From Ophelia neglecta (lineage: Eukaryota): 64,000 bases of DNA. Below are positions 274 through 64,000 of the stretch, piece by piece (the first letter of the stretch is position 1; the number at the start of each line of letters is the position of its first letter). The translations under genes and the position numbers were made by a program. The stretch is from assembly GCA_965285935.1 (NCBI GenBank), contig OZ260666.1, forward strand, positions 3,162,001-3,226,000, in the 5' to 3' direction. The notes beneath the pieces were generated by a model. The model worked only from the letters and a program-made list of their open reading frames with translations, searched no databases and was not told where the DNA came from.

Positions 274-2821
274 CGGGCCACTGCTGATTATCTGGTCCAA
301 ACTTAAATACAAACAGCTTTCTATAAATTTTCATTATAAAAACCTATCCATCAAATGTTTGAGTACTTGACAAAATTGATGATTCTTTAAAACAGGTTCC
401 CTTCAAAGATATGTTTATACTGCTGTCAAACAAGTAACTATAAGACGGTGATAAATGCACCGTTTGAAATATAGACATATCGGTATGCCAAGCCGGCCAA
501 AAGGAGGAATGCATATACATCGCGTTTTATGAGCATCGCGCGAAAATTTAGATCCCGGCAGTGTAAAATGACACACCTGTGCTTTTTATACTAACTCATC
601 ATCATTTAGTTTACCTATTTTTCTTCAAATAATTTTTTCGAACAACAGAAACAGCCGTTAACTATTATCTATATACTTTGTATCTTAGCTCATTCGTACA
701 TATGGCGCCTTTACTTGTGACACAAAGCCCCCAAACCCCATGCAATCCCCAACAACCCACCCCCAAACTGATGCCACCAAATTCCATATTTTTCTTGAGG
801 TCACATATTACAATTAGACCTAAAGCCTCAAGGAAACTGGCATTTAAAAAAAAACATTGTAATCGTTACAAATTCCATATACAAAGTAAATCATTATTCA
901 ACACGTCTGACGGATATATACTTGAAAGATAAAGATATAATATTTGCTGCAATTCTTAATAACTAAACAAATAAGTACGATTTTATTTTTGAAAAAACAA
1001 TTGGTATGAGTAGTTTTATATTTAGATTTATATACAGTGCATTAACCAGGGTTACTGCTTCAGTGGAGTTATTAAGTGGTGTCAAATTTACTACACCACG
1101 AATTGCAATAACGAAACCATTCGATGTACAGAAGAAATGTACTAATATTGAAATCAGATGGTCATCAAATGTTAAACCTTAGGCCATGAAAAATACAAAC
1201 TTTAGTTGGCCTGCTCGCGCGCCTAGCTGTTTCCTCCAATTTCTCTCAACAAACAATGTTTTGGATTGTTGTTGGTACTCAAGAAAGTTGCGGAATTGTT
1301 TTTGTTTTGATAAATGATTTTAGTTGTGATCAAATTATATCTTAAACTTAAGAGAAAGAAACATTGCTTTGATTGTTAGTGGAAATTTAGCATGTATATG
1401 TAACCTTTGTTTATTAAGCTGATAAATAAGATATCTCTTTTGTGGGCTAAGTGAGTGCGTGTTAATTTTGCGCCGTCTCCCTAGCTTTTCGAAAACGCTG
1501 CGACACTAACCAAAGTTCATACTTTGCATTGTCTTGCTCTATTTATATATATATTCCGCGAAATTATTTCTAACCAGTCCTAATTTATCAGGAAGCAGTT
1601 GGGATGGTTATTTATTCTCTTTCCGATAATATTTTCAGTGGTATATGTTCAGGATGATAATTATTTTCCCGCGTTAGCTATGTTCATGGCACATTGGCAT
1701 ATTGACACCACACCCTGCCGCTCGTTAATGGCTATAAACCCTTCTTCAAGCATAATATTTGGTTAAAATAATATGACGTACGTAAATGGGTGTAAAGATA
1801 TGAAGGAAGCTGAGCGTTTCCCTCAACCTGGTTTAGAAATATTACAAAGTCCGCCCAATCAAGCATTTGGAAAGGTTGTCAAGTTACAAGTACATTGCGT
1901 CAGCTGTCAATGCCTTAGCAAAAACGAGCGCCCTATTCTTTAGAAAGGCCCACATCCCAGCAATGTTCCGGATTCCCACCCGTTAGGAATTCTGGCCCCA
2001 AGTGCCGATCAGATTTAAATATTGTTTACTAGTTTAAGTGACCAACTGCCTCCATGGTTCTGATGCCATGCACTGTCCAAAAGCAGTCCCCGATATCCAC
2101 CCAAATTTTCTAATAATATTCTATTCCATCCATAGTCCCCCATCCCGTCCAAAAGCGATCCAAGTTCCAAATCCCATTCGAGGCCCCCGATACTATCAAA
2201 TCTCTTCAATCGCATCCGGAGTCCCCGATCCTACCTAAAGTCCCCAATCACAAGGTCTCAGATCTCCCCCAAAGTTCCGGATAGTACCCGAGATCTGCGT
2301 TACCACCCAAGCTCCTGACCTTACCCAAATTCCTAAATTTCACCTAGTATGCCATGTTCCGCATAAGTCACCCGTCCCATCCATATAACCTAACCCTATG
2401 CTTGGATGGTGCTGACCAAATCGCCCTTGATTTTCTTCCCCGCCACTGATCTAGTCCCATCCATTTTACACAGCCCAATAGCAGATTTAAAGTGCCCAAC
2501 TCCCAAGTCCCCGGACCCAAAGTCTCTGATTCCATTCCCCATCCTTGTCCCCTTCCGCTACTCTTGGTCCTCTCCCTCGTCGCTGATCGAATCCAAGTAT
2601 CTCACTCACGAACGGGACTACTTTTTTTCTTCCGGCTCCTATCCACTCTAGCATACAGGTACCTCAGAGGGTCGAGAATCGAACGGAGGCCGGGATCATG
2701 AGGAGATATTCCTACAGAATTCATAAAGTTTGCTTTTAAATTTATATTTTGGTTGAGTGGATGTTAGTGATGCGGAATATAGATAAGATATCCAGCATTG
2801 CAGGGCTTAAGTTAATCAAGA

Positions 2822-3829: not shown

Positions 3830-6453
3830 TCACATCTCACCTTGCCTGGCTGTATTCAAGTAAACCGGAGGTACTGGCATCCGACTCTCAGAATACCCGG
3901 ACGCGATAGAGCTGAAGCTACTAGAATATCCGTATTCACCGCTCTCTAGTAGGAAAACAAACATTTCAAACTTAAATCAGCGCGTTTTAAACAGGACAAC
4001 AACATTTCATTTTATCCTGGTATCCAAATCTGAATACATCATAAAATAAAATAAATTAAATAATCTTATTGTGGACATTGAATGAGGTCGAAACAAAATG
4101 TCTATACTATGAAATGTATTGTAGGATAAACTCGTGGTAAATATTCAAGATAAGGAAAGTCATAATGGATATCGGCTCACCGTCCATTTGAGGGTCAAAC
4201 ATGACGTTCTCTACCATGGTCGTGTCGTCATTTTCCTCATTATCGTCCTGACGGCCGGATTGCTGGTGATGGCAGCATGGCTCCTGACCGCAGCGTGGAT
4301 GGTGACCACACGATGGCTCCTGACAGCAGTACGGATGGTGACCGCAGAGTGGTTCGTGACGACATCTATGCACGTGATTGCCACTTGACACGTGACAACA
4401 GCGCTGCTCATGACGGCAACGTTGTTCGTGACAGCAGCCTGACACCTGACGACACATACGTTCGTGCGGACAGCTGAGCTCATGACAGTTTCTTTGCTCG
4501 TGTAGACAACCTGGTCTGGAACGACAGTGTTCGTCTGAAACGAGAATTGAAGTCGTTTGGGTTGAGGCAGCTCCATTTCTTTGTTTTGATTCTAGACCAA
4601 AAATAAGATTTATCTATACAGACATTCACCTTTGTCCTAGATTTTATGGCATGAAGGAGAGCATTTTGTTCTGTTATATATATGCGTTAAGGAATTATAT
4701 AAGACACTCACGTCGATAGCAGACCAGTATGATAAGGAGTACTACGGATATTAGGACACAAATTCCCGTGATTCCCACAATCAGTCCCAGAGTGACAGAA
4801 AGATGTACAACACCACCTGAAAAAAATCATAACTTCATGAAATAAACCAATACGATCGATGTATCAATTGATAGTAATTGCAGAAAAACACCAAATGCAA
4901 ATTTAGGGGAAGGGGGAGGGAAGTGTTGGTCTTCGGTCCACATTTTGTTTTAGCCAGTGTTTAGTAAGATGGGTTCAGCGGGGATCAGGGCGCTGAGTAT
5001 CGGACCTCACTCTGGGTGTGGACCATCATGCATACAGATAACCGATAACATGCACGTGTGAGTTCAATGACTTTCGGTACCTAAATTTGCAACGAGAATT
5101 TCATAGGTTTTAGAAACCACGTTGCTTAGCACGTTCAGTGTGCGTTGCTTACTTGAGTCTGACACTAGTGTAGAGCCAGCCTCTCTCCCTAGACAGGAGT
5201 ATTTATGGAACGGGTTCATAGTGCTGTGTTTCGCTATTATAAAGCTAGATTGGTTTGTTGTATTTCCGATAACAGCGCCATCTCGCAACCAAGTGTATGT
5301 CATCGGAAGTCGAACGTCTTCTGGCAAAGAGGTTGAAGTGACGTTACACATCAACTTAAAACCTTTTGTATCTATTTGGGCTGGAGATGGTTTTCCTGCA
5401 AAGAATCTGAATATGTTATCATTCAAATGAACCCAGCGAGGGCGATTAGTAGTAATAACGTGTGCTGCTTGGTATGACTCAAGAAGGAGCTTAATATGTT
5501 GACACATCGATTTTTCGCGGTTTTATTTACTGCTTTAGTGCAAGTATAAGAAAGAGCAACCTGTAGTTCATTTAACCAAGTATATCAAATATTGAAATTC
5601 GTCGAATCATTCATAAATTAATGAATTGCTCTATACAAAAGAAATATGTCCGCAGTTGCAAAATTAGTGTTATCTACATTGCTATACATTTCCCCTGGAG
5701 AAAAAAAATATGAACAAACAAAGGAGCGAAGATATTTAATACATGAGATACTACTTTAAGAGTTTAACCAACCCTGAAATATGCAATCTATGCATTGTCT
5801 AAGCGACTGTAATATATTAATAACTACATATATGAGACACTTCGTCAACAAGAAATAACATCTAATCTACACCTTTCAGGGCCGAGCGATTACGCAAAGG
5901 GAACTTACCCCAGACAAAAAGTGTATTGGTTTCACTATAGTTAGTACGACGACAGTTGTAGAGGCCAGCGTCATGTCTCGTGACATTTTTGAAGGTCATC
6001 TCTAGGCCGGTTTCAATTATCTTTACGTTGAGATGCTCACGACTGTATTTACTACTATTCCTTAATACCACACTCCCGTTCACAATGTTAAATGTGTTGA
6101 TATCGTTCTTATCAAAACATTTGAGTGGCTCTCTGCTATTTGTCTCAGGAAGATTCCACCACAATGTGGCCTTTTCACCAACATTCACTCTAGGGACTAT
6201 GCCTGAAGCAGCTGGAAATTGAAAGGCTAACTTTGTTTATTATTCTTTGCATACAATCTTAGTTCTTACCTTAAAAGCGGCCAGTTATGATGGATGATCT
6301 TGGGGTGAACACTTATGTACCAAATTAAAAATGTATTCTAAGAAATCTACAAACATCAATGTATAAAATCTGGTACTTACCACCAGGTGGTGTGCTCATA
6401 ACATCTGCTATCTTGCACAGACAGACTAATAGTACGATCGACTTTAACTCCAT
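3830..6453 (-). CDS. IgSF type-I membrane receptor, paralog A (~416 aa)
   Basis: Exons: 6453-6381 (signal peptide MELKSIVLLVCLCKIADVMSTPPG), 6211-5909 (V-like Ig, DAGLYNC), 5395-5153 (Ig2, LMC..YTWLRDG..YSC), 4816-4712 (TM), 4591-4181 (Cys/His-rich), 3945-3830 (ESGEYGYSSSFSSIASGYSESRMPVPPVYLNTARQGEM*). All introns are GT-AG phase 1 and the frame is open. Confidence 0.85.
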
Positions 6454-16020: not shown

Positions 16021-16236
16021 AGAATTTACTGCATATCATAAATAACGAGAGAGAGAGAAAGTTTACTTTCAAATGAAAGATGGGACGGCAGACAATCAGA
16101 AGGTTTATTCGTTTTTATGTAGTGGAAAAGAGGTTGGTGTGTCTTCCACCGGCTTTCTTTTGATGTTTTTGTCATTGGTAATAGTATATTGATACAAACA
16201 TATTTTTAGGTCTCGGTGAATTTAAGCTGGCCTATG

Positions 16237-19200
16237 ATGGAGACCAAGTCGATCGTACTGCTGGTTTGTCTGTGCAAGGTAGAAGGTGTTATGACTGCAC
16301 CATCGAGTGGTAAGTACTGGAATTTTATACACTGACGTATGTAGAATCTTAGAATCGACTTATGATTAGTCAAGAAGTGTACACCAAGTCTCACTCATTC
16401 ATCATGACTGATCGCTTTCAAGGGTATGTCGTTTTCCGACTATTATTCACATTGGAAGGGTGTTTTCGAATTTCAGCTTCTTCCGGCACAGTCACTAAAG
16501 TCACTAATAGAACCCTACAATTTGCAACTTCCACAGGCACAGTCATTCGAGTGAATATTGGCGACAACGCCACCTTGCGGTGGAAACTGCCGAAGGAAAA
16601 TAGCATAGAGCTCACAAAATGTTATGACACGAACATGATCAACACATTTAACATTGTGAACGTGACGGTGGTATTCAGGAGTGTTAATATGCGCCATGAG
16701 CCTCTCAGTTCAGGGACAAACGAGATCAGCCTAACGATGACATTGACAAATGTCACGAGAGAAGACGCTGGTTCGTACAACTGTCGTCGTACTAACTATA
16801 GTGAAACCAACACTGTTTTTGTCTGGGGTAAGTTCTCCTTTTGATTTTTCTTGACACTGACAGACCATGTGTCTCCTTCTTTTGTGCTTTTTTTGGCTAC
16901 GTAAAAAACAATCTGTGAAGTAGTACATATATTGTCGGACTTTGGTTCTTAACCCTGAAAGAAATAGAATGTTATTTCTTTTTTTTTACCAGGTTCCTCT
17001 TATATCTATTCGTAACTGACTTTACAATCGTTGCAGTAATGTCCATCTTACCATATATAAGTATTTGATAAACCCTTAAATTATATTTTGATTAAGTCTC
17101 TCTTTCCCTTTGTTTGTGCGCCACTTTTTCTTTAAGGTAAAGAATTAGACAATGTAGAAAGAAGGAAAAGATTGCATACCCTAACTTTTTGCATTATCAA
17201 TACCATAAATTTAGTTACGATTGCTTCGTCAAGTTTCAGTATTGGATATACTTTTTTAATTATTAAAAGTTGAAACATCCTCATGATTACACTACAGAAG
17301 ACCACGTGAATTAATTTTTTCACATAGTCAACTACTCATGGATAATACCAACCGTATATTTAAGATTTAAATTGTCTTAGCCATATTTTATACCTATGCC
17401 TTTCGCTCGGTCCATATGATTACATTTTCCGATTATTTTCAGGAAGACCTTTCCCAGCCCTAATAGATTCAGAGGGCTTTAAGTTGATGTGTAACGTCAC
17501 TTCCACTTCTGTGCCAGAAGGCTTTCGAACTCCGATGGCTTACACTTGGTTAAGAGATGGCGCTGTTATCGGAAATACCTCGTTCGAATCTAACTATATG
17601 ATTCCGATATGGAACATTATGAACCCGTTCCATAAATACTCCTGTCTAGGGAGAGAGAATGGCTCTACACTAGTGTCAGACTCAAGTAAGTAACACATAC
17701 TGATCGTGCTTAGCTGCGTGGCTACCAAAACCCATGGAAGTCACAATGCACTGTTGGGTACCGAACGATAATTAACTAAGACGAGTAATGTGGATTTTAC
17801 ATCAGTTTCTGCAAGCATTGCTGAAACACCATTAAAATGAAACAGTTTAAACTTGGTTTAAGTCATCAAGTAATTTCAATTGATATATCGATGTTATGCG
17901 TTAACGATCCGATAATGAGTATGTTTTTTTTCAGGTGGTTTTGTGCAGCTTCCTGTTACCCCAGGCCTGCTGGTGATGATCACGGGATCCTGTGTCCTAA
18001 CCTTACTACTTGTCTTAGTCATACTGCTCTGCTATCGACGTGAGTGTCTTGTCATATCTTCAACCTCGCATTTTATGTTTCAGATTCCCTGTATAACGGA
18101 AATCGTGCTTAGTAAAATAGAATGCATACTCTGGGGATCAAATTATGTATAGAAGAGACATAATCATGCTTTTCGAAACCGTAGTGTGACATTCCGTACT
18201 TAGGAGTATGGGTGCAAAGGGTGAAGCTTTTCATCCGGAAAATCCATCAGGGCTACGCAGAATTTTAGTTACTTAGACTCTTAATCAAAGATTGGACAGA
18301 CCATAATTAAAGAATCATTCCATCAGTCCGTATTCCAAAAATAAGAAGGTCATATTTAGCATTTAAACGCTTCAACGCAAAGAGGCCCTTTTACAATACA
18401 CGTGTTAAAGAAATCCCCACACAGCTTGTTTAAAAACAATGAAAGTAAACATAATAAACTACCTAGTATTACAAAATGCTAAGGTTCTTACTGTATTACA
18501 TATTCGTTGATGTAGTTTACTAAATGGGTCAAGCATACTATCTAAGAAAATCAATATTTTAATGCACCAGTCTGAAATTAGCCAAATTTCTCTTTCATGC
18601 TACACAGTCTGATATAAATAGATCATATAAGATTTATTTCTCAATCAGATAATCACATCTTTATTTTGGTATAGAATCAAAACTAAGACAAGGAGACCGT
18701 CACCAGGCAGACAGCTTTCATGAACGAAGGCGTCGTCAGGAGTCATGCTGCTGTCACGAACAACGCTGCCGCCACGATCCAAACTGTTGTCACCAGTCAA
18801 GGGGGCATCACGAGTCTGGCTGTCGTCACGAGGCACCCTGCCGTCACCGGCCACACTGCTGTCAGGAGCCATCGTGTGGTCACGATCCACGCTGCGGTCA
18901 GGAGCAATCGTGTGGTCACCATCCACGCTGCGGTCAGGAGCCATCGTGTGTTCACGATCCACGCTGCGGTCAGGAGCCATCGTGTGGTCACCATCCACGC
19001 GGTGGTCAGGAGCCATCCTGCCATCACCAGCCATCCGGCCGTCAGGTAGATAACGATGATGATTACGACACGACCATGGTAGAGAACATCATGTTTGACC
19101 CTCAAATGGACGGTGAGCCGATATCCATAATTACTTTCCTCATCATACATTTATATTCATCCCCGGCACCTTTTACTGAATTTGGGTATAAATATTGTTT

Positions 19201-19654
19201 GAATATTAAGTGTGGGTGTACTGTATGGTTCAACAGCTGCAATAAATAACTTTTACCTCAAAGCTATTTCTGAGAAGAAGAGATAAATGAGAGAATGCGC
19301 AGTGAGACCAGCTGAGCCACTGTCAGCGCACAATTGAATTTAAACTACATGCAAAAGTAGTTTTTAACTAAAAAATAAATATAATACTAAGGACCAATAT
19401 ATCCCACGATATATTTTCATGGTATAAACATTTCGATTTGACAACCTTCTCTTCTCAAATTTCTGTTACAACTTTATTTCATTCGACGTCTTTCATTACA
19501 GTTAGAATACTGTTGCAAACTTATTGTTTTCCAAACAGAGGTCAGTGAGTTTGGACAGTCTAATACATTCAGACCTATCGCGTCCGGGTATTCCGAGGTT
19601 TGGGTGCCAGTACCTCCGCTATCTGGGAATACAGCCAGGCAAGGTGAGAAATGA
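16237..19654 (+). CDS. IgSF type-I membrane receptor, paralog B (~441 aa), ITIM-bearing
   Basis: Exons: 16237-16309 (signal peptide), 16477-16827 (V-like), 17443-17685 (Ig2), 17935-18039 (TM), 18675-19112 (Cys/His repeats, CGQEPSCGHHPR x~4; this frame is not in the ORF track), 19539-19654 (EVSEFGQSNTFRPIASGYSEVWVPVPPLSGNTARQGEK*). All GT-AG phase 1. Confidence 0.85.
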
Positions 19655-19785
19655 TGAAACCTGGGTAATCATATCATCAATGATAAATGTTAAGGTCACA
19701 GTATTCTTGCAAAACATTAAAAGGTTAGTCATTTTTTGGAGTTTTGTCTTTGAAATAATAAAGCATGATCCGGAATATAATGTTA

Positions 19786-19957
19786 CAGTGGCACCTGTGT
19801 GTGTGGTCACCTGTGCACTACAGTCACCTGCGCCATAAGGTCACAAATAACAGCCTAATCCCCATGTATGCCTGCGTTAATTGACCTGCTTATGAAGGTC
19901 ACCTACATAATTTGGCAAGTTTTTGCTCTTGCCTGACCTGTTTAAAAGGTTACACTG
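19786..19957. mobile_element. Tc1/mariner (pogo/Tigger-like) MITE
   Basis: TA|CAGTG...CACTG|TA termini with internal GGTCACCTG repeats; not seen at the homologous position downstream of A or D. Confidence 0.6.
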
Positions 19958-20418
19958 TATGACAAAGCTAAGCTGGGTTTGGCAGATCTTAGATGGGCTA
20001 GGAGGCTCTTTATTTTAATTGGTGTTTCAATTTGCTATAGCCTAGCATCCCTGGATACCTATATTCTCGCATGATTAACATGCACTTACCCAAAATGTAA
20101 ATTAAAACCATAATTATGAATTCTGCAGCAAAATCTTCTTCCGGCCGTCTATCGTTTCTCGACCCTCTGAGGTACCTGTATGCTAGTGTGGATAGGAGAT
20201 GGAAGAAAAGGAGTAGACTCGTCCCTGAATGAGACGCTGGGATGCGATGAATGAAGGGGAAGAGGACCAAGGACGCCGGAAGGGGACAAGGATGGGGAGT
20301 GGGATCAGGGACTTTGGGTGGGACCAGGGATCTTCGGGGACTTGGGAGTTTGGTTTCAACCATCCATAGGTCTTTGTACAATTTATTGGAGCGGGTGCCT
20401 TACTTGGGACCAGATCAA

Positions 20419-24597: not shown

Positions 24598-27500
24598 ATG
24601 GGGTCCGAGTTGATCGTCCTACTTCTATGTCTGTGCCATGTAGCAGATGTTATGACCGCACCAGCTAGTGGTAAGTACCGCACCACCTAGGGGTAAGTAC
24701 CGCACCAGCTAGTGGTAAGTACAGCACCAGCTAGGGGTAAGTACCGCACCACCTAGTGGTAAGTACCGCACCACCTAGTGGTAAGTACCACACCAGCTAG
24801 TGGTAAGTACCGCACCAGCTAGTGGTAAGTACCGCACCAGCTAGTGGTAAATACCGCACCAGCTAGTGTAATTTACCACACCAGCTAGTGGTAAGTTCCG
24901 CACCAGCTAGTGGTAAGAACCGCAACAGATAGTGGTAAGTACCGCGCTACCCAGTGGTAAGCACCGTGCCGCCTTTGTGGTAAGTACCCAACCACTTTGT
25001 GGTGAGTACCACGCCACCTTGTGTTAAGTACCCATCCATCTAGTGGTAAGACCCAGAATGGTGTAATGACTTGGGTTAGTAAGGTATTGGACGCCTTAAT
25101 ATGTCTGTGTTTAAAGGATAAAGATAAAGGTGTTTTCTGAATCATATTCACATTTGAAGAAGGCAAACATTATGAAGATGGATTTATTTATAACTTATAG
25201 AACCCTACAATGTGTAACTTCCACAGGTACAGTCACTCGAGTGAATATTGGCGACAACGCCATCCTGCGGTGGAAACTGCCGAAGGAAAATGACATAGAA
25301 CCAACAAAATGTTATGACACGAACAAGAACAACACATTTAACATTGTGAACATGACCGTGTTACCCAAGAGTGGTAACTTCAGCCTGGGCTTGTCTGAGC
25401 TTTTGAATGCAGGGAGAAACGAGATCAGCCTAACAATGACATTGACAAATGTCACGAGGGAAGACGCTGGTTCGTACAAATGTCGTCGTACTAGCTATAG
25501 TGAAACCAACACTGTTTTTGTCTGGGGTAAGTTTCCTTTGGGTTTTTCCGTGGCCCTGAAAGACTATGTGTCCGATATTTTAATTGGCGACTGAAAAAAC
25601 AATCAGTGAACTAGTAAATATATCGTCGTATTTTAGTATAAGTAAGACTTTCTTAATGATTTCTTTCATTAAATGTCTCCTCCCGTTTATTTTCTTCATG
25701 GTGAAGAATAGGACAATGTAACTCTCCTTTTCTAGAAGGAAAAATAAATATGCAACCTCAAACGTGTTTAATAATCGATATGAAAATAAACTATACTTCG
25801 AGCCATCCAGCAAACCATTAATCATAACATTTAGGTGTTCAAATATTTTACTGTTTTATCATATATATCAAGTAGTATCTTTAAATTTTAAAATGGTCAA
25901 GTAACTGCTATATTTTATACTTATCGCCCTCACTGGGTGCGATGGAATGAATTCATATCATTATGTTTGCGTTGCAGGAAAACCAACTCCAGCCATAATT
26001 GATACAGAGGGTTTAAAATTAATGTGTGACGTCATTTCCACCTCTCTACCAGACTACGTTCGACCTCCGATGACTTACAGTTGGTTACGAGATGGCGCTT
26101 TAATCGGAAAAACCACGGATGAGTCTACCTATACGATACCCATACACAGCATATTTAACCAGTTCTCTGAATACTCCTGTCGAGGGAGGGAGTATGGCTC
26201 AAGTCTACACTCAGACTCAAGTAGGCAAAACACATTAATAGTGGCTAGCAATATGGCTAAGCAAAACTGATTAAATTCATATCGACAACTTGCTATGGAA
26301 CGCTTGTATATTGGCGAACAGGGTATATTTGTCCAATGTGCTGCAACCCGCTGCCAAAAGTACCAATTGGAAAGCTGATAAATCCTTTGTCATGTACGAG
26401 GGGCGGAGAGGTGGGAATTACAGTCTATTAAGAGGTCGATCCCAAGTTTCGGAAATACTCCTGCCCCCCCCCCCCCCCCAACCCCGCAACTTGTATAGGG
26501 AGTATGTTAATCGTATGGTCAATATTAACATTACACACTATTTTGAACAATATACAAACGAGTTCTGCTATAATCCGCTTGCAGAACCGGATTGTCTACA
26601 ACTTTCCTACCCCTCGATCGTTTGTGTTTATTATACGAATATGAGCGTTTGTGTTTTAGGTGGCTCTGTACGGCTTCCTGTCTCTCCAAGACTGGTGGCG
26701 ACAATCGCAGGATTTTGTGCCATAACAATCCTTACACTACTTGTCGCACTATCCTGCTGTCAACGTGAGTGTATTTTCATTTCTTCAAAGTTAAGCACGT
26801 GTTCATATGCATTAAACTCCCTTGATATCATCGCAACCGTATCTCAATATTATAAATAACATTACTTGAGGGACTGACATAACAAGAATTCACAAAGATC
26901 TATTAGACTAAAGTTTAACACTGCTTTTATATTACATGTACATAATATAATATTATCTTACTGCCATTTTATCTTACACTATCTCGGCGCATCAAATTGT
27001 TATCTTTCCGAATCAAATAATCTTATTTTAATTTTGTTCTAGATTCAAAACAAAGAAAGCGAGCTGCATCAAGTTCCGTCACAAACGAACACGATCGTCA
27101 GAAGTCAGGTTGTCGTCACGAGAAACGCGACCGACACGAGCCAGGCTGCCAACACGAACCCATCTGTCGTCAGAAGTCAGGCTGCCATCATGAACCTATC
27201 TGTCGTCAGAAGTCAGGCTGCCATCATAAACCCATCTGTCGTCAGAAGTCAGGTTGCCATCACGAACAACGCTGCCATCATAGCCAAAGCCGTCACGAAT
27301 CAAGCTACAATCAAGCACCTAGTTGTTGTCACGAGGAAGGTTGCCGACCTAATCCCCGCTGTCTTCAAGAGACACTCAGCCGTCATGAGTCAAACCCCCA
27401 TCTGGAGACGACACTCCATGGTAACGAGCCGCCCAACCGTCAGAACAATGATGAACATGTTGAGAGCATCACGGTAGAGAAGAGCGCCACGTTTCAGCCT

Positions 27501-27849
27501 CAATTGGAGGGTGAGTTTAAGGCCATTATTTGACCGGCTAGTATAGTGAAGTGTTTCCGCGAGCTCTCATTATCCTGCCTGACATCCCCATTTGTCAGAC
27601 TATTCCACTGACTAAATCAAGCGTCCAATATCCTTCAAACTTCTTTACTTTTGCGTTAAAACTATTCTTTCACAATAATCGAAACTTCCTAGATGAATTA
27701 ATTAATGTTTCTTCATTTTCTAATTCGTGTCTTAACCACCAGAGGCCAGCGAGGGACAGCCTAGCACAGTCTTACCTACAGAAGTTCGATATTCATTTGT
27801 TTGGGTACCACGACCTCCGCCTTGTGTGCAGAAAGCGACCCAAAAATGA
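24598..27849 (+). CDS. IgSF type-I membrane receptor, paralog C (~431 aa), ITIM-bearing
   Basis: Exons: 24598-24670 (signal peptide MGSELIVLLLCLCHVADVMTAPAS), 25227-25526 (V-like), 25978-26220 (Ig2), 26660-26764 (TM), 27043-27510 (Cys/His, CRQKSGCHHEPI x3), 27743-27849 (EASEGQPSTVLPTEVRYSFVWVPRPPPCVQKATQK*). Confidence 0.85.
24655..25051 (+). repeat. 22-bp minisatellite spanning the exon 1/intron 1 junction of C (~18 copies)
   Basis: Unit ACCGCACCAGCTAGTG|GTAAGT, degenerating toward the 3' end. Confidence 0.9.
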
Positions 27850-32261: not shown

Positions 32262-34896
32262 ATGGAGTCAAAGCTGACCGTACTACTAGTCTGTCTGTGT
32301 AAGATAACAGATGTTATGACCGCGCCACCTAGCGGTAAGTACCAGAATTTACATTGTGACGTATGTAGATTTCTTAGCTTTAATAACTTTATGATGGGTC
32401 AAGAAGTATACACCAAGTCTCATTCATTCATCATAACTGGCCGCTTTTACAGTAACGGCGTTTTCCTAATCTTATTCACCCTGGAAGGAGGATTGTATGC
32501 ATAGAATGATAAACATAGAAAGCCTTTCTTCCAGCTTCTTCAGTCACAGTCACTCGAGTGAGTGTTGGTGAAGAGGCCACCTTGTGGTGGAATCTTCCTG
32601 AGACAAATAGCAGAGAGCCACTCAAATGTTTTGATAAGAACGAGATCAACACATTTAATATTGTGAACGGGAATGTGGTATTAAGAAATAATAGTAAATA
32701 CAGTCGTGAGCGTCTCTACGTAAAGATAATTGAAACCGGCCTAGAGATGACCTTCAAAAATGTCACGAGAAATGACGCTGGCCTCTATTACTGTCGTCGT
32801 ACTAACTATAGTAAAAGCAATACACTTTTTGTCTGGGGTAAGTTCCCTTTCCTATTCGCTCGGCCCTAAAAGGTGTAGATTAGATGTTATTTCTTCTTGA
32901 CGAAGTGTCTCATATATGTAGTTATAACTATATTACAGTCGCTTAGGCAATGCATAGATTGTCATGTTTCAGTGCAGATAAACTCTTAAAGTAGTATCTC
33001 ATGCATTAAATATCTAAGCTCCATAGTTTTTGAATTTTTTTCCACAAGGGGAAAGGTATAGCAACGTGGATAGCACTAATTGTCCAACTTCGAACATATT
33101 TCATTATGTTTATAGCAATTCATTAATTTACGAATGATTCGTCGGATTTTAATATTGGATATACTTAATTAAATGAACTACAGGTTGATCTTTCTTGTAC
33201 TTGCCCTAAAGCAGTAAATAGGTCTAGGTAATATAGATGCGTTACCATATATATCGTCTTCTTGAGTCATACCAAGCAGCACACGTTATTACTACTAATC
33301 GCCCTCGCTGCATTCATTTGAATAATTACATATTCAGATTATTTGCAGGAAAACCATCTCCAGCCCAAATAGATGCAAAAGGTTTTAAGTTGATGTGTAA
33401 CGTCACTTCAACCTCTTTGCCAGAAGACGTTCGACCTCCGATGACATATACTTGGTTGCGAGATGGCGCTGTTATCGGAAATACCACAAACCAATCTAGC
33501 TTTATGATAGCATTACACAGCACTATGAACCCGTTCCATAAATACTCCTGTCTAGGGAGAGAGGCTGGCTCTACACTAGCGTCAGACTCAAGTAAGCAAC
33601 GCACACTAGTAGTACTAACCAACGTAGCTTCTAAAACCGATGGAAATTCCCATTGCATGTTTTTGCACCGAACGTCGGTGAACTAATACGCGCATGTCCA
33701 GTTTAATCGGCTATCCATATGTATGATCGTCCCAAGCCAGAGTGAGGTCCTATCCTCAGCGCTCTGGCCCTCTCATCTTGTAGCGTCTGAAATAAAATGT
33801 TGGCTTAAGACGGGCCTATCTACTACTCTCTCTCTCCCGTCACTTCAATTTGAATTTGGTGTTTTTTTGCAATTACTATCAACTAATATTTGATTTGAAT
33901 ATCATGTTTTCAGGTGGTTTTGTACGTCTTCCTGTCACTCTGGGACTACCGGGAATCACGGGATTTGGTGTCATAATATCCGCAGTACTCCTTATCATAC
34001 TGGTCTGCTATCGACGTACGTGTCTTTTATCTTGAAAGAGAATTCCGCGCCATCGTGTATTGTACTTTCTGAGCGCATATTCCCCGATCGAACAGAACAA
34101 AATGACCTGATTTCTCCTCCGTGTCATAAAATCTGAAACATTTCTTGCGCTAGCAAATAATTACAACTTAAATTTGATCTAGGATCAAAACAAAGAAATG
34201 AACCTGCGTCAACCCAAACGACTTCAATTGTTGTCACAGACGAACACGGTCGTTCCAGACCAGGTTGTCTTCACGAGCAAAGAAACTGTCAAGAGCACAG
34301 CTGTCCTCACGAACGTATGTGTCGTCAGGCGTCATGCTGCTGTCACGAACAACGTTGCCGTCATGAGCAGCGCTGTTGTCACGTGTCAAGCGGCAATCAC
34401 GTGCATAGATGTCGTCACGAACCACTCTGCCGTCTACAGCCAAGCCGCAATCAGGAACCATCGTGTGGTCACCAGCCATCCGGCCGTCAGGTAGATAACG
34501 TTGAAGACTACGACACGACCATGGTAGAGAACATCATGTTTGACCCTCGAATGGACGGTGAGCCGATATCTATTAAATTCCCCTTTCATAAATTAATATT
34601 CATCAAGAATTTCTAATATCCTACAACATATTTTCATAGTAGAGATATTTCGTTTTGACCACCGCCTTTTTCTTTTAATATTATATATTGTATGTTTATT
34701 ATATTTTATAAATTTCCTTATTCAGAGTAAGAATTCCAGAATTTTGTGATATGATGTTATCCTGTTAGCAACGCGCTGGTTTGAGTTTGAAATGTTTGTT
34801 TTCCTACTAGAGAGCGGTGAATACGGATTGTCCAGTAGGTTCAGCTATATCGCGGCCGGGTATTCTGAGGTTCGGTTGCCAGTACGTCCGCTTTAA
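32262..34896 (+). CDS. IgSF type-I membrane receptor, paralog D (~393 aa)
   Basis: Exons: 32262-32334 (signal peptide), 32535-32837 (V-like), 33349-33591 (Ig2), 33914-34015 (TM), 34183-34557 (Cys/His-rich), 34811-34896 (ESGEYGLSSRFSYIAAGYSEVRLPVRPL*). Closest to A. Confidence 0.85.
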
Positions 34897-37800
34897 GTTT
34901 ATACAGCCAAGCAATGTGAGAAATGATGAAACTTGGCAAACATTTCATCAAGGTCAAATGTCAAGTTCACAGTTTTCTGTGCAAATAATTTTAAGTTTAG
35001 ATTGATTGTTCATATTTTTTCTGCGATGAATTAAAACAATGAATGACATGAAATGATTTGACTAGACTAGGCTTGGGTGGGCTGGGGTAAGATGGGCTGG
35101 AAGGTCCTATGTTGTTAATTTGTGTCTTGATTAACTTAGCCCTGCAATGCTGGATACCTAATCTATATTCCGCATCACTCACGTCAACTCAACCAAAATA
35201 TGAATTTAAAGGCAGACTTTATGAACTCTGTAGGATTATCTCCTCATGTTCCCGGCCACCGTTCGCTTCTCGACCCTCTGAGGTACCTGTATGCTAAAGT
35301 GGATAGGAGCCGGAAGAAAAAAAATAGACCCGTTCGGGGAAGAGAACCAAGCACAGCGGGGACAAGGATGGATAATGGGATCAGGGACTTAGGGTCGGAC
35401 CGGGGACTTCGGGGATTGGTCCACGAGCGGCAGGAGATAGTGTGAACACACTAGTGTGACATGAACTTAGCAAACGCAGGAAAAATTATAATCAACCTGA
35501 AAATATACCACTGAAAATGTTTTATGGTGAATAGAATATATAAACATTCCACCGGCTTCCTGTTAAGTTACGGGGGGTTCGATAACTTCGGAGAATGTGT
35601 ATAAAAAAAGAGCTAGGCTATGAAATGTAGGAACTTTGGGTTGCGTCCCAGCAATTTAAATAAGCTAGGAGAGAGGGCGCAAAGTTAACACACACAAACA
35701 CACACTTAGCTTACATAAAGTGATATATTATTTCGCAGCTATAAAATCAAGAAGAAAGGTAACATATGAATCTAAAATTTTACTTTCACATTTAATGATT
35801 AAAGCTTTATACCATTTATCCCAACAAATAGAAATACGCAACTTTATTGAGTCAGAAAAGCTATCATAGAGTTTGTTAATTAAGAGAAATGTGAGGCAGA
35901 GGCTAGACGCGCTCGGACAGTAACCAAACTTTTCGTGGCCAAAGGTTTGACATTCAATGACCCTCTGATTTCAACATAAGTAAATTTCTTTTTTACATCG
36001 AATGATTTCCTAATTGTTCTTTGCAATGTAGTTTATTTGACACCGCTTAGAAAGTATTTAATGTATTATTAAAACTACTAAATGTATGAATCTAAATATA
36101 AGACCATTCATGCCATTTTTTTGTCAAAAATAAAAGCCGTGCATAGTTGTTGAATCCAAGATGTACAACAAATATTATATTTTTATCTTACAAGCATATT
36201 TATTCGTTACAAGTGTTAAATAATGACTTACATTGTATATACGATTTGCAAAGGCTTTAGAAATCCCATTTTCTCTAGGTGTTGGCTCCTCATGTAATAA
36301 AATGTAGAAAGTATTAGAATTGTCCCCCCCCCCCCCCCCCCCCGATTTAATTGAGGGAATCTTAAGGACGTTGTTCGACATGTTTTGTATCTGTAATTTA
36401 AAGACACATTTTAAGAACCCTATTGGCCTATTTTTTGCCTAGGCAGAACCTTGACCGGTTACAACGAAACAAAATGGTCCAGTAGTACAGGGGTCCTGAA
36501 AATTCCTTCACTTTCGTCCCTGAATAATGCTAGAGTAGTATTCTCTGGAAAGAAGGTCTGCGTAGTGTAAGTAGTACGGTAAATTGCCTTGAGTTGCCAA
36601 TTTTCGGGAATTTCGTAGTTCGCGAAGATTTCCTTGTTTGCCGTAGTTGTCATTGCTATTAATGGGTCCCTCAAATATTGACGCTCGCAGGTAGCGCTGG
36701 TTGAAAACACATACTGCGCACTTACGCCGGGGTGGTGATATATTTAAAAGTGCCATACATTCAGGTAAACCCCTACTTGCCAAACACTTCATGGGTTTGC
36801 TGCGCAATAAAGCCACTTTTAAAAGATGTTCGTTAGAAGTTTAATATCACCAAATATCTTGCTGCACACACAAGGAAATAACAGAGGTCCATAAAGCCGG
36901 TCACACTATTAAGATTATACATTTAAGGTTGTACATGGAAAGCACCAAAAACTTGTTAGCTATCAACCTACTCGTACTTTATAAATTATAGTTACTGTCA
37001 ATTGAAGCCTTAACACCATATTTTATGGCACTCTTAACCTTTATCCTCTGAGCGGCTCTACACTGGATCAATTTTATAATAATTATATCGCATTAGATTC
37101 GGGACAGGCAGATGGTAGAAAAAGCCAATAATGCTTTGTTTCTAAACTGATATAATTGTAATTTCTATGCAAAAATACTGGTACCGTGGTTGCTGAAAGG
37201 GGTGGGGTAGGGGAAGGGAGGACCTCTCCCTTGATTGTAGCTTGATATAGAGTGCAGGCGGATGTGAGGGGTAGGTTAGGGAAAGTGAGGACCCCGTCTT
37301 CACTGTAGTTTGATATAGGGCCCAGGAGGAGGTAAATAGGGGGAAGGAAGGATCCCCAACCACCACCCACCCCCTAACCCCCCCCCCCCCCCCCCCGCCT
37401 TCTACAGCAGCACCGATGGGGATTTATTTAGTCATACATACTTAATGTCATCGATACGTTTACATGGCTGAATATCATAAATCAACATAAGCAGATGTCA
37501 GGACTTGCGCAAACACTTTAGTTTGAACGAGGCGCAAGTGAATCTGTATATAGCTATTAAATTAAGGTGCATTGCACTTTATATGATAAGCAAAAGTCTT
37601 TACCCGGAATATTGATTTTTAGCGTTCATATCACTTATCTAGGCGGTGGTTGAAACAACAGTATCGGCGCTTTACATGTTCATGCCTAAATGGAGTACTA
37701 TGTGTATATTCCACGGCTGCAATACTCATTATTGTAATTAATTATTCCTTCATTAGACTATAAACCTGATACAAGCCGACGAGATATGTAAACATAAGGT

Positions 37801-63143: not shown

Positions 63144-64000
63144 CAAGGTCAAATGTTAAGGTCACAGTTATCTTGCAAATAATCTAAAGATTAGATTGAT
63201 TATTGGTTTAAACATATTTATTTACATAATTTGGATCTTACAGAAGCCAGGGGCTTAGAAGGTAATTTCCAAATAAATCATTAGCACAATATTTACAAAT
63301 ATGCATGAGATAAAAGATGATGAGATGAGATGAAATGTAATGGAAAGGTACAATACTCGTAGTTTAGAGTCATTGGACGAGATTTGTCTACAAAGTTGAT
63401 GAATTCAACATAAATAGATAGAGAGTTTTACAATTCAGTGAGTAGGAGAACAAGTATACTAAATATAAAAATATAGATTGATTATTGATATTTTGTCTGC
63501 GATGAATTAAAACAAGGAATGACGTGAAATGATTTGACTAGACTAAGCTTGGGTGGGCTGGGGTTAGATGCGCTGGAAGGTCCTATGTTGTTAATTTGTG
63601 TCTTGATTAACTTAGCCCTGCAATGCTGGATACCTTATCTATATTACGCATCACTAACATCCACTCAACCAAAATATGAATTTAAAAGCAAACTTTATGA
63701 ACTCTGTAGGATTATCTCCTAATGTTCCCGGCCACCGATCGATTCTCAACCCACTGAGGGACCTGTATGCTAGAGTGGATAGGAGCTTGAAGGATAAAGT
63801 TGGACCTTATCGAGAGTGAGATACTGAGATTAGGTCAATGACGGGGAAGAGAACCAAAGACAGCGGAAGGGGACAAGGAGTGAATGGGATCATGAATTTA
63901 GGGTCGGACTGGGGACTTCGGGGATTGGTACCCGAGCGGCAGCAGACATGAACTTAGCTAACGCAGGAAAAATAATTATGAACCTGAAAATATAGCACTG
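63144..64000 (+). repeat. Orphan copy of the receptor-gene 3' flank (homologous to 34949-35515)
   Basis: Long colinear match, e.g. GACTA.GCTTGGGTGGGCTGGGG..GGAAGGTCCTATGTTGTTAATTTGTGTCTTGATTAACTTAGCCCTGCAATGCTGGATACC. Confidence 0.9.
63206..63473 (-). mobile_element. Short retro-insertion with 14-bp TSD
   Basis: TAGATTGATTATTG at 63192-63205 and 63474-63487; the minus strand ends ...AAATAAATATGTTTAAAC; the site is empty at about 34998-35012. Confidence 0.7.

What the first reader, a model, noticed from the sequence alone, without database searches (positions are those of the whole stretch)
18675..19112. Cys/His-rich hexad-repeat cytoplasmic domain between the TM helix and the ITIM
Seen: in the frame fixed by splicing (missing from the ORF track for B and C), exon 5 encodes a 6-residue periodicity C-x-[HQ]-[EHD]-[PQ]-x, e.g. 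B ...CCCHEQRCRHDPNCCHQ...CCQEPSCGHDPRCGQEQSCGHHPRCGQEPSC.... The same pattern occurs in A (4181-4591), C (27043-27510) and D (34183-34557). Established: Cys/His-dense cytosolic tracts bind Zn/Cu/Cd or are palmitoylated, and CD4/CD8 tails use Cys in a zinc clasp with Lck. Inference: a metal- or redox-responsive module, or a metal-driven clustering module, gating an inhibitory receptor. I know of no IgSF receptor with this tail.
Basis: partly seen in the sequence, partly recalled or inferred. Interest (0 to 1): 0.85.

Follow-up and report, generated by a model that had tools for sequence, protein, structure and literature searches.

The report
Cysteine/histidine hexad-repeat receptor tail
A clustered family of about 30 invertebrate immunoglobulin-type membrane receptors carries, between the membrane helix and an inhibitory-type tyrosine motif, a disordered intracellular stretch with a cysteine every six residues and many histidines; it has no detectable relative in public protein data and probably binds metal, but its expression and function are untested.

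Summary
Window 18675-19112 (+) is a 438-nt exon with a polypyrimidine tract, AG acceptor and GTGAG donor. It is open only in the frame set by the phase-1 introns around it. It encodes about 16 hexads, consensus C-x-[HQ]-[EHD]-[PQ]-x (18 Cys and 18 His in 145 aa). Cys-Cys spacing peaks at 6, 12 and 18 residues, and none of 5000 shuffles reached the observed value. Paralogs A, C and D in the window have the same exon. The genome holds 31 copies, all within 1 Mb of one contig. Of these, 26 are intact, 117-214 aa long and always in frame.

Substitutions fit coding in this frame: pN/pS is 0.40, against 2.79 and 0.79 in the other two frames. Cysteine columns vary least (3/72 against 99/558, p = 0.002). 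Histidine columns are not specially conserved.

A profile search of 1.84 billion protein representatives, Pfam, PDB sequences, the ESM Atlas and five paper searches found no relative or precedent. AlphaFold2 predicts disorder.

No RNA data exist, so splicing is inferred. Metal binding is my favoured mechanism but is untested. Palmitoylation, redox sensing and an inert expanded minisatellite remain open. Other first-stage notes of this scan flagged the same family on this window.

The parts
16237..16311 (+). Gene B exon 1: start codon and signal peptide (25 codons plus 1 base; phase-1 donor GTAAGT)
   Evidence: Read. tblastn finds the same exon in A, C and D.
16477..16827 (+). Gene B exon 2: V-like Ig domain (351 nt, phase 1-1)
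   Evidence: Pfam ig PF00047 E = 3.9e-6, 27.5 bits against a cut-off of 21.8; V-set and I-set hits are weaker.
17443..17685 (+). Gene B exon 3: second, membrane-proximal Ig-like domain (243 nt, phase 1-1)
   Evidence: Only a weak Ig_3 hit, E = 0.1. Conserved in A, C and D at 62-72% identity.
17935..18039 (+). Gene B exon 4: transmembrane helix ending in ...LLCYR(R), with basic residues on the inner side
   Evidence: Read. Found 250-650 nt upstream of every exon-5 copy examined.
18675..19112 (+). Gene B exon 5 (the finding): basic juxtamembrane stretch, about 16 Cys/His hexads, then an acidic conserved end (...DDDYDTTMVENIMFDPQMD)
19539..19654 (+). Gene B exon 6: last coding exon with the ITIM-like SGYSEV, ending ...NTARQGEK plus TGA stop
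   Evidence: I infer the stop from read-through of the apparent donor; TGA is conserved in A, B and D.
4181..4591 (-). Paralog A exon 5 (136 codons, 18 Cys, 16 His, 15 hexads in one register)
27043..27510 (+). Paralog C exon 5 (155 codons). It carries a different expanded 12-residue unit, CRQKSG-CHHEPI.
34183..34557 (+). Paralog D exon 5 (124 codons, shortest hexad tract in the window)

Best explanation
Shown. Window 18675-19112 is a genuine coding exon of a type I IgSF receptor gene with the layout signal peptide, V-like Ig, Ig-like, TM, this exon, tyrosine-motif exon. The exon encodes an intrinsically disordered cytoplasmic module. It has a basic juxtamembrane stretch, then 13-25 hexads of consensus C-x-[HQ]-[EHD]-[PQ]-x, then an acidic conserved end. 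The module arose and keeps changing length by in-frame expansion and contraction of 18-, 36- and 72-nt units. It occurs only in a 1-Mb cluster of about 31 paralogs. Its cysteines are the residues under the strongest purifying selection.

Inferred. The module is a thiol-rich metal-binding tract, most likely for Zn2+ and possibly Cu+. Each double hexad (for example C-G-H-H-P-R-C-G-Q-E-P-S) would offer two Cys plus one or two His/Asp/Glu. The tract would be disordered when empty and would compact or cross-link neighbouring tails when loaded. That would set the reach or accessibility of the distal tyrosine motif.

My confidence that the shown part holds is about 0.85. My confidence in the whole statement, including metal binding, is 0.4.
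For: - Exon signals and a unique open frame consistent with phase-1 introns on both sides.
- Exon GC is 52-58%, against 34-37% in the flanks.
- Periodicity is far beyond chance.
- 26 of 31 genomic copies are intact, with AG/GT bounds and lengths of 117-214 aa, all in frame. This includes indels that are not multiples of the 18-nt unit.
- Pooled pN/pS is 0.40 in this frame, against 2.79 and 0.79 in the other two. pN/pS of 0.56-0.81 is similar to the Ig-like exon 3 of the same gene pairs, 0.56-0.66.
- Cys columns are variable in 3/72 cases, against 99/558 for all other residues, Fisher p = 0.002.
- Subtypes only 42-44% identical to B keep the hexad pattern in register, although they expanded different units.
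- The TM exon lies upstream and the tyrosine-motif exon downstream of nearly every copy examined.
- AlphaFold2 gives mean pLDDT 43 and no secondary structure, as expected for a disordered or metal-dependent tract.
- For metal binding itself the only support is composition. The tail is 12% Cys and 12% His, with Glu/Asp next to His, in a reducing compartment. From general knowledge, such tracts (metallothioneins, ZIP/ZnT loops, Hpn-type proteins) bind Zn, Cu or Ni.
Against: - There is no transcript evidence. All public runs holding the locus are genomic. Exon 5 is symmetric (phase 1-1), so it could be skipped without breaking the frame.
- His columns are no more conserved than average (11/76). 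Hexad position 3 toggles between His and Gln, a single third-base change.
- Cys spacing is 6. It does not follow the C-x-C, C-x2-C or other spacings of known zinc or thiolate-cluster sites.
- Overall constraint is weak (dN/dS 0.36-0.76).
- The paralogs are young and may exchange sequence. The substitution counts are therefore small and not independent.
- 18-nt satellites are common in this genome, so hexad periodicity can arise without selection.
Confidence: 0.4

Rival explanations
1. Inert spacer. An 18-nt coding minisatellite expanded inside a disordered tail exon. The Cys/His periodicity is inherited from the founding unit and is tolerated, not used. Only frame and length matter, because they keep the distal tyrosine motif attached.
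For: - There are tandem 18/36/72-nt repeats at 84-91% identity in the 36/72-nt rows, with copy-number differences between near-identical paralogs.
- Unrelated 18-nt satellites elsewhere in the genome give hexad 'peptides' in any frame.
- Constraint is weak, with dN/dS 0.36-0.76.
- His is not conserved above average.
- The paralogs are young, with within-subtype pS of 0.05-0.18.
Against: - Cys columns vary about four times less than the rest.
- Subtypes 42-44% identical kept Cys in hexad register, while other hexad positions and the expanded unit itself changed.
- The Cys/His frame has the lowest pN/pS of the three frames.
Confidence: 0.25
2. Multiple S-palmitoylation. The periodic cysteines are acylated by DHHC enzymes. 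This stitches the tail to the inner leaflet (as in the cysteine-string protein), targets the receptor to ordered membrane domains, and holds the tyrosine motif at the membrane.
For: - Selection acts on Cys and not on His.
- A conserved Cys sits at the TM/cytosol boundary (…C-Y-R), and a CC/CCC cluster lies 20-25 residues further in.
- From general knowledge, juxtamembrane Cys of CD4, CD8 and LAT are palmitoylated.
Against: - The Cys are spread over about 100 very hydrophilic residues rich in R, E, Q and H. They are not packed in a short string next to hydrophobic or basic residues.
- The uniformly high His, Glu and Pro content has no role in acylation.
Confidence: 0.15
3. Redox sensor or cross-linker. 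The free thiols are oxidised to intra- or intermolecular disulfides during an oxidative burst, and this reversibly changes tail conformation or oligomeric state.
For: - There is Cys-specific constraint in a predicted disordered tract.
- Redox-sensitive, conditionally disordered Cys-rich regions are a described class (abstract of bioRxiv 10.1101/412692, listed).
Against: There is no direct evidence. Regular 6-residue spacing with Pro at +4 is not a known feature of redox switches. Eighteen or more thiols is far more than a switch needs.
Confidence: 0.1
4. Not part of the protein. Exon 5 is not spliced into the mature mRNA, or is used in another frame or only in a minor isoform, and TM exon 4 joins exon 6 directly.
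For: No RNA data exist. The exon is phase-symmetric, so skipping keeps the frame. The repeat core is also nearly open in a second frame.
Against: - Splice signals and one fully open frame are kept in 26 of 31 copies, despite many indels.
- The non-repeat ends of the exon are open only in the Cys/His frame.
- pN/pS is lowest in that frame.
Confidence: 0.07

Closest known systems
ITIM-bearing IgSF receptor multigene families (for example KIR/LILR/Siglec-type receptors in vertebrates, and clustered IgSF receptor families in invertebrates such as Hydractinia Alr or Botryllus receptors listed)
   Same: Type I layout with signal peptide, Ig domains, one TM helix and a tail tyrosine motif fitting [SIVL]-x-Y-x-x-[IVL]. 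Phase-1 introns. A tandem cluster with paralogs that differ in tyrosine motifs.
   Different: None of these is known to have a long periodic Cys/His tract between the TM and the tyrosine motif. No sequence relative of the tail was found anywhere.
Metallothioneins and other thiolate-cluster proteins (including the annelid Enchytraeus cysteine-rich protein, recalled from memory)
   Same: Very high Cys content, no stable fold without metal, cytosolic location.
   Different: Metallothioneins use C-x-C, C-x-x-C and CC spacings, have almost no His, and are small soluble proteins. Here the spacing is 6, His is 12%, and the tract is tethered to a receptor. There is no Pfam hit.
Prion protein octarepeats (works-like analogy only)
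   Same: Tandem short repeats in a disordered region, each offering a metal ligand. Repeat number varies by in-frame slippage.
   Different: Octarepeats are extracellular, use His only, bind Cu2+, have a period of 8 and share no sequence similarity.
CD4/CD8-Lck zinc clasp
   Same: Cysteines in an IgSF receptor tail that share a Zn2+ with a partner.
   Different: The clasp needs one C-x-C in the receptor and one C-x-x-C in the kinase. Here there is no C-x-C apart from CCC runs, and there are 13-24 Cys.
Cysteine-string protein (DNAJC5) palmitoylated string
   Same: Many cysteines in a cytosolic segment near a membrane.
   Different: The string has about 14 Cys packed in about 24 residues. Here there is one Cys per hexad over 80-150 hydrophilic residues, and no J domain.
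Trappin 'cementoin' hexapeptide repeats (Pfam PF10511)
   Same: A hexad repeat with G-Q-[DE]-P. It was the only Pfam model touched.
   Different: E = 0.081 and 13 bits against a cut-off of 27. Cementoin is extracellular, lacks Cys and serves as a transglutaminase substrate through Gln and Lys.

Membership tests
IgSF inhibitory-type (ITIM) receptor | At least one Ig-fold ectodomain | tested here: met
   Exon 2 matches Pfam ig PF00047 at 27.5 bits, above the 21.8 cut-off, E = 3.9e-6. Exon 3 gives only a weak Ig_3 hit (E = 0.1).
IgSF inhibitory-type (ITIM) receptor | A single TM helix with the tail on the cytosolic side | tested here: met
   Exon 4 encodes a stretch of about 23 hydrophobic residues followed by R-R-Q-S-K-L-R. 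It is conserved upstream of all copies. Topology follows from the signal peptide and the positive-inside rule (inference).
IgSF inhibitory-type (ITIM) receptor | [SIVL]-x-Y-x-x-[IVL] in the tail | tested here: met
   SGYSEV in B-type, SGYSE[VI] in D-type and VRYSFV in C-type. A-type has SGYSES, so the motif is not met there.
IgSF inhibitory-type (ITIM) receptor | Tyrosine phosphorylation and recruitment of an SH2 phosphatase | not testable with these tools
   Needs biochemistry.
Metallothionein | C-x-C, C-x-x-C or CC motifs forming thiolate clusters | tested here: not met
   Cys-Cys pairs at lag 2 number 0-1 and at lag 3 number 0. The dominant lags are 6, 12 and 18.
Metallothionein | Match to a metallothionein sequence family | tested here: not met
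   No Pfam family reaches E <= 1 apart from Cementoin at 0.081. No PDB sequence matches at E <= 10.
Metallothionein | Stoichiometric metal binding | not testable with these tools
   Needs expressed protein.
CD4/CD8-type zinc clasp | A C-x-C motif in the receptor tail paired with C-x-x-C of a Src-family kinase | tested here: not met
   There is no isolated C-x-C; lag-2 pairs arise only inside CCC. I did not search for a partner kinase.
Cysteine-string (palmitoylated) domain | A dense uninterrupted string of Cys (more than 10 in about 25 residues) | tested here: not met
   At most 3 adjacent Cys; otherwise one Cys per 6 residues.
Trappin cementoin repeat (PF10511) | Score above the Pfam gathering threshold | tested here: not met
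   13 bits against 27.

The most novel reading that the evidence does not exclude
The hexad tract is a new kind of receptor-tethered metal sensor. Cytosolic free Zn2+ or Cu+, which changes during immune activation, loads the Cys/His hexads and bridges neighbouring tails. Metal status would then directly set clustering, and with it the inhibitory or activating output, of a whole family of diversified IgSF receptors. Hexad number, which varies from 13 to 25 between paralogs, would tune the threshold.
Probability: 0.12. Interest if true: 0.85.

Novelty: new variant of a known kind. Interest (0 to 1): 0.55.

Why it matters
Clustered, fast-evolving IgSF receptors with tyrosine motifs are a recurring solution for innate and self/non-self recognition. 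Their tails are usually short and are read only for tyrosine motifs. Here about 26 intact genes share a long, periodic, cysteine-constrained module with no relative among 1.84 billion protein cluster representatives. If it binds metal, is multiply acylated or senses redox state, it would couple receptor signalling to a cellular variable in a way not described for this receptor class. It would also give a compact, repeat-tunable thiol module of interest to protein chemists. If it is only a tolerated minisatellite, it is still a clean example of a coding repeat whose length changes by whole codons across a gene family.

Tried and rejected
- Homologues of the tail. An HMM of the four window tails was searched against 1.84 billion representatives. 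It gave 13 hits at E <= 1e-3. On inspection all are unrelated low-complexity repeats, such as bacterial CG-x-EP-[ST] hexads and protist or animal repeat proteins. I reject them as relatives.
- ESM Atlas by features: no usable hit.
- PDB sequences with the 16-sequence profile: none at E <= 10.
- Pfam: only Cementoin, below threshold.
- AlphaFold2 on a 16-sequence alignment: mean pLDDT 43. I did not run a fold search because the model is too poor to use.
- RNA evidence: the run search found three runs of one sample, none of them RNA. Laying them showed contigs across introns, no splice joints, and contig breaks inside the exon-5 repeat. There is no information on expression.
- Other own-genome hits (C7 at 88.4 Mb, C9 at 0.13 Mb and C9 at 76.3 Mb) are 18-nt satellites open in several frames. 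They are not paralogs.
- Signalling-motif readings of the hexads (TRAF-type P-x-Q-E, heme-regulatory C-P, P-x-x-P): I considered these by eye and rejected them, because the required residues are in the wrong positions.
- Literature: five full-text searches found no description of such a tail.
- Steps left out: I never searched the joined, spliced protein. I sent no complex prediction, because I do not claim a specific binding pair.
- Organism: I did not determine it.

Full report
**What is in the sequence**

Window 18675-19112 on the + strand is preceded by a pyrimidine-rich tract ending in TAG. It is followed by GTGAGC. Of the three forward frames, only the one starting at 18677 is free of stops; the other two have 3 and 5. 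In that frame the exon encodes three parts:
- a basic stretch;
- about 16 hexads of the type C-x-[HQ]-[EHD]-[PQ]-x;
- an acidic end, ...DDDYDTTMVENIMFDPQMD.

The 145 residues include 18 Cys and 18 His. Cys-Cys pairs number 11, 12 and 10 at lags 6, 12 and 18, and 0-4 at every other lag. None of 5000 residue shuffles reaches the lag-6 count, whose shuffle mean is 2.0. At the DNA level the exon is a coding minisatellite with periods of 18, 36 and 72 nt; the 36-nt unit is present in 4.9 copies at 89% identity.

**The gene around it**

Reading the flanks gives a six-exon gene B:

| Exon | Window coordinates | Content |
|---|---|---|
| 1 | 16237-16311 | signal peptide |
| 2 | 16477-16827 | V-like Ig domain (Pfam ig 27.5 bits, cut-off 21.8) |
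| 3 | 17443-17685 | second, weakly Ig-like domain |
| 4 | 17935-18039 | transmembrane helix ending ...LLCYR |
| 5 | 18675-19112 | the finding |
| 6 | 19539-19654 | SGYSEV, which fits the ITIM consensus, then a TGA stop just past an apparent donor |

Every intron is phase 1. The single base left by exon 4 plus the first two bases of exon 5 selects exactly the Cys/His frame. This is an inference from gene structure, not from cDNA. Because exon 5 is phase-symmetric, skipping it would also keep the frame.

Paralogs A (minus strand), C and D have the same six exons. Exon-5 GC is 52-58%, against 34-37% in the flanking 500 nt.

**Family size and dynamics**

A six-frame search of the whole assembly (762 Mb) with the B tail found strong matches only on contig C9 between 3.07 and 4.06 Mb. 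After fetching the weaker ones I count 31 exon-5 copies.
- 26 are intact, with AG/GT bounds and an open Cys/His frame. They comprise 8 B-type, 5 A-type, 3 D-type and 10 C-type copies.
- 5 are interrupted by a stop or frameshift (L008, L017, L019, L038, L039).
- Intact lengths run from 117 to 214 codons.

Near-identical B-type copies differ by whole 12-residue units. They also differ by 1-, 4-, 5- and 13-codon indels that are not multiples of the 18-nt unit, and all of these are in frame. C-type genes expanded a different unit, CRQKSG-CHHEPI, sometimes within a 24-residue super-unit, but kept a Cys every six residues. The TM exon lies upstream, and a tyrosine-motif exon downstream, of nearly every copy examined.

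**Is it coding, and what is constrained?**

- For gapless pairs of close paralogs, pooled pN/pS is 0.40 in the Cys/His frame, 2.79 in the second frame and 0.79 in the third. The counts are small: 28 synonymous and 44 non-synonymous differences.
- Pairwise dN/dS across subtypes is 0.36-0.76.
- For the same window gene pairs, the tail gives 0.56-0.81 and the Ig-like exon 3 gives 0.56-0.66. The tail is therefore about as constrained as an ectodomain exon of this fast-evolving family.
- Within the four subtypes, Cys-majority columns vary in 3 of 72 cases, against 99 of 558 for all other residues (Fisher p = 0.002). His columns vary in 11 of 76, no different from the rest.
- In the four-paralog alignment, 12 of the 31 invariant columns are Cys and only 3 are His. 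Aligners favour Cys-Cys matches, so this second figure is softer.

Caveats: the paralogs are young, may undergo gene conversion, and are not independent samples.

**Search for relatives and precedents**

- A profile of the four window tails against 1.84 billion cluster representatives gave 13 hits at E <= 1e-3. I read them, and all are unrelated repeat proteins.
- Pfam gave only the trappin cementoin hexapeptide model, at 13 bits against a cut-off of 27.
- The PDB sequence set gave nothing at E <= 10.
- The ESM Atlas gave nothing usable.
- Five full-text paper searches found no IgSF or other receptor with such a tail.
- AlphaFold2 on a 16-sequence alignment predicts disorder, with mean pLDDT 43 and no secondary structure.

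The other weak own-genome hits are 18-nt satellites open in several frames. They show that this genome readily makes hexad-period repeats.

**Expression**

Laid on 16200-19800, they give contigs across introns, no splice joints, and breaks inside the exon-5 repeat. They are genomic and say nothing about splicing.

**Mechanism**

Shown:
- a periodic, Cys-constrained, disordered module;
- its place between the membrane and the tyrosine motif;
- length tuned by in-frame repeat turnover.

Inferred: what the cysteines do. I favour metal binding. The tract is 12% Cys and 12% His, with Glu/Asp beside the His. It sits in a reducing compartment and is predicted to have no fold of its own. Each double hexad offers two Cys and one or two His or acidic ligands.

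Three facts count against a strict Cys2His2 picture:
- His is not preferentially conserved;
- hexad position 3 toggles between His and Gln;
- the spacing matches no known zinc or thiolate-cluster motif.

Cys-only mechanisms fit the conservation pattern equally well: a thiolate cluster, multiple S-acylation or disulfide switching. A tolerated minisatellite is not excluded. My odds are:

| Reading | Odds |
|---|---|
| Metal binding | about 0.4 |
| Inert spacer | 0.25 |
| Palmitoylation | 0.15 |
| Redox | 0.1 |
| Not expressed as modelled | 0.07 |

**Comparison and novelty**

The receptor as a whole meets the sequence-level features of an ITIM-type IgSF receptor: Ig domain, TM helix and motif. 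Its signalling is untestable here. The tail is not a metallothionein, a zinc clasp, a cysteine string or a cementoin repeat, because each failed a defining feature (see the membership table). It works most like metal-binding tandem repeats in disordered regions, such as the PrP octarepeat; this is analogy only. I class it as a new variant of a known kind: a familiar receptor class with an undescribed intracellular module.

Notes s1-741936 and s1-741977 describe the same family on this window, and my reading agrees with them.
Noticed in passing
window 19539-19654 (B), 3830-3945 minus strand (A), 34810-34925 (D): The last coding exon differs between paralogs. B and D have SGYSE[VI], which fits the ITIM consensus. 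A has SGYSES (motif lost) but gains P-V-Y-L-N-T, a Y-x-N site. D-type copies carry a stop 9 codons earlier than A and B. C-type copies have VRYSFV.
   Followed up: partly
window 19960-20345, 35059-35419, 63535-63928 and 2501-2785 (minus strand): A non-coding block of about 400 nt, 68-78% identical, follows the last exon of B, D, A and a further paralog at the window's end. It has stops in all frames. It is either a conserved 3' UTR or a dispersed repeat.
   Followed up: no
G000:C9 3.07-4.06 Mb (loci L001-L040): The receptor family sits in a cluster of about 1 Mb built from repeated multi-gene blocks. B-type exon-5 copies at 3.077, 3.336, 3.616 and 3.951 Mb are 97-99% identical to the window's copy. 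This indicates recent segmental duplication or, less likely, assembly duplication.
   Followed up: partly
L029/L030 (G000:C7 88.405-88.407 Mb), L031 4954-5610, L032 1157-3012: There are long 18-nt-period satellites that stay open in several frames. One reads as C-x-x-x-P-[LV] hexads (…CGWKPLCSWNPVCSQNPL…) for more than 230 codons. They are unrelated to the receptor tails but show the genome's tendency to form hexad-period repeats.
   Followed up: partly
proteins P0007 and P0008: Two database proteins, bacterial by my reading, carry runs of C-G-x-E-P-[ST] hexads much like the B-type CGQEPS unit. They are probably convergent low complexity, but the motif recurs.
   Followed up: no
window 18883-19138: Short-read contigs of all three public runs break inside the exon-5 repeat, and many laid pieces are only 90-95% alike (paralog cross-mapping). 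Short-read data cannot size this repeat.
   Followed up: no
window 63151-63928: Matches to the region just past B's exon 6 and to the downstream block show that another family member starts to appear at the very end of the window.
   Followed up: no
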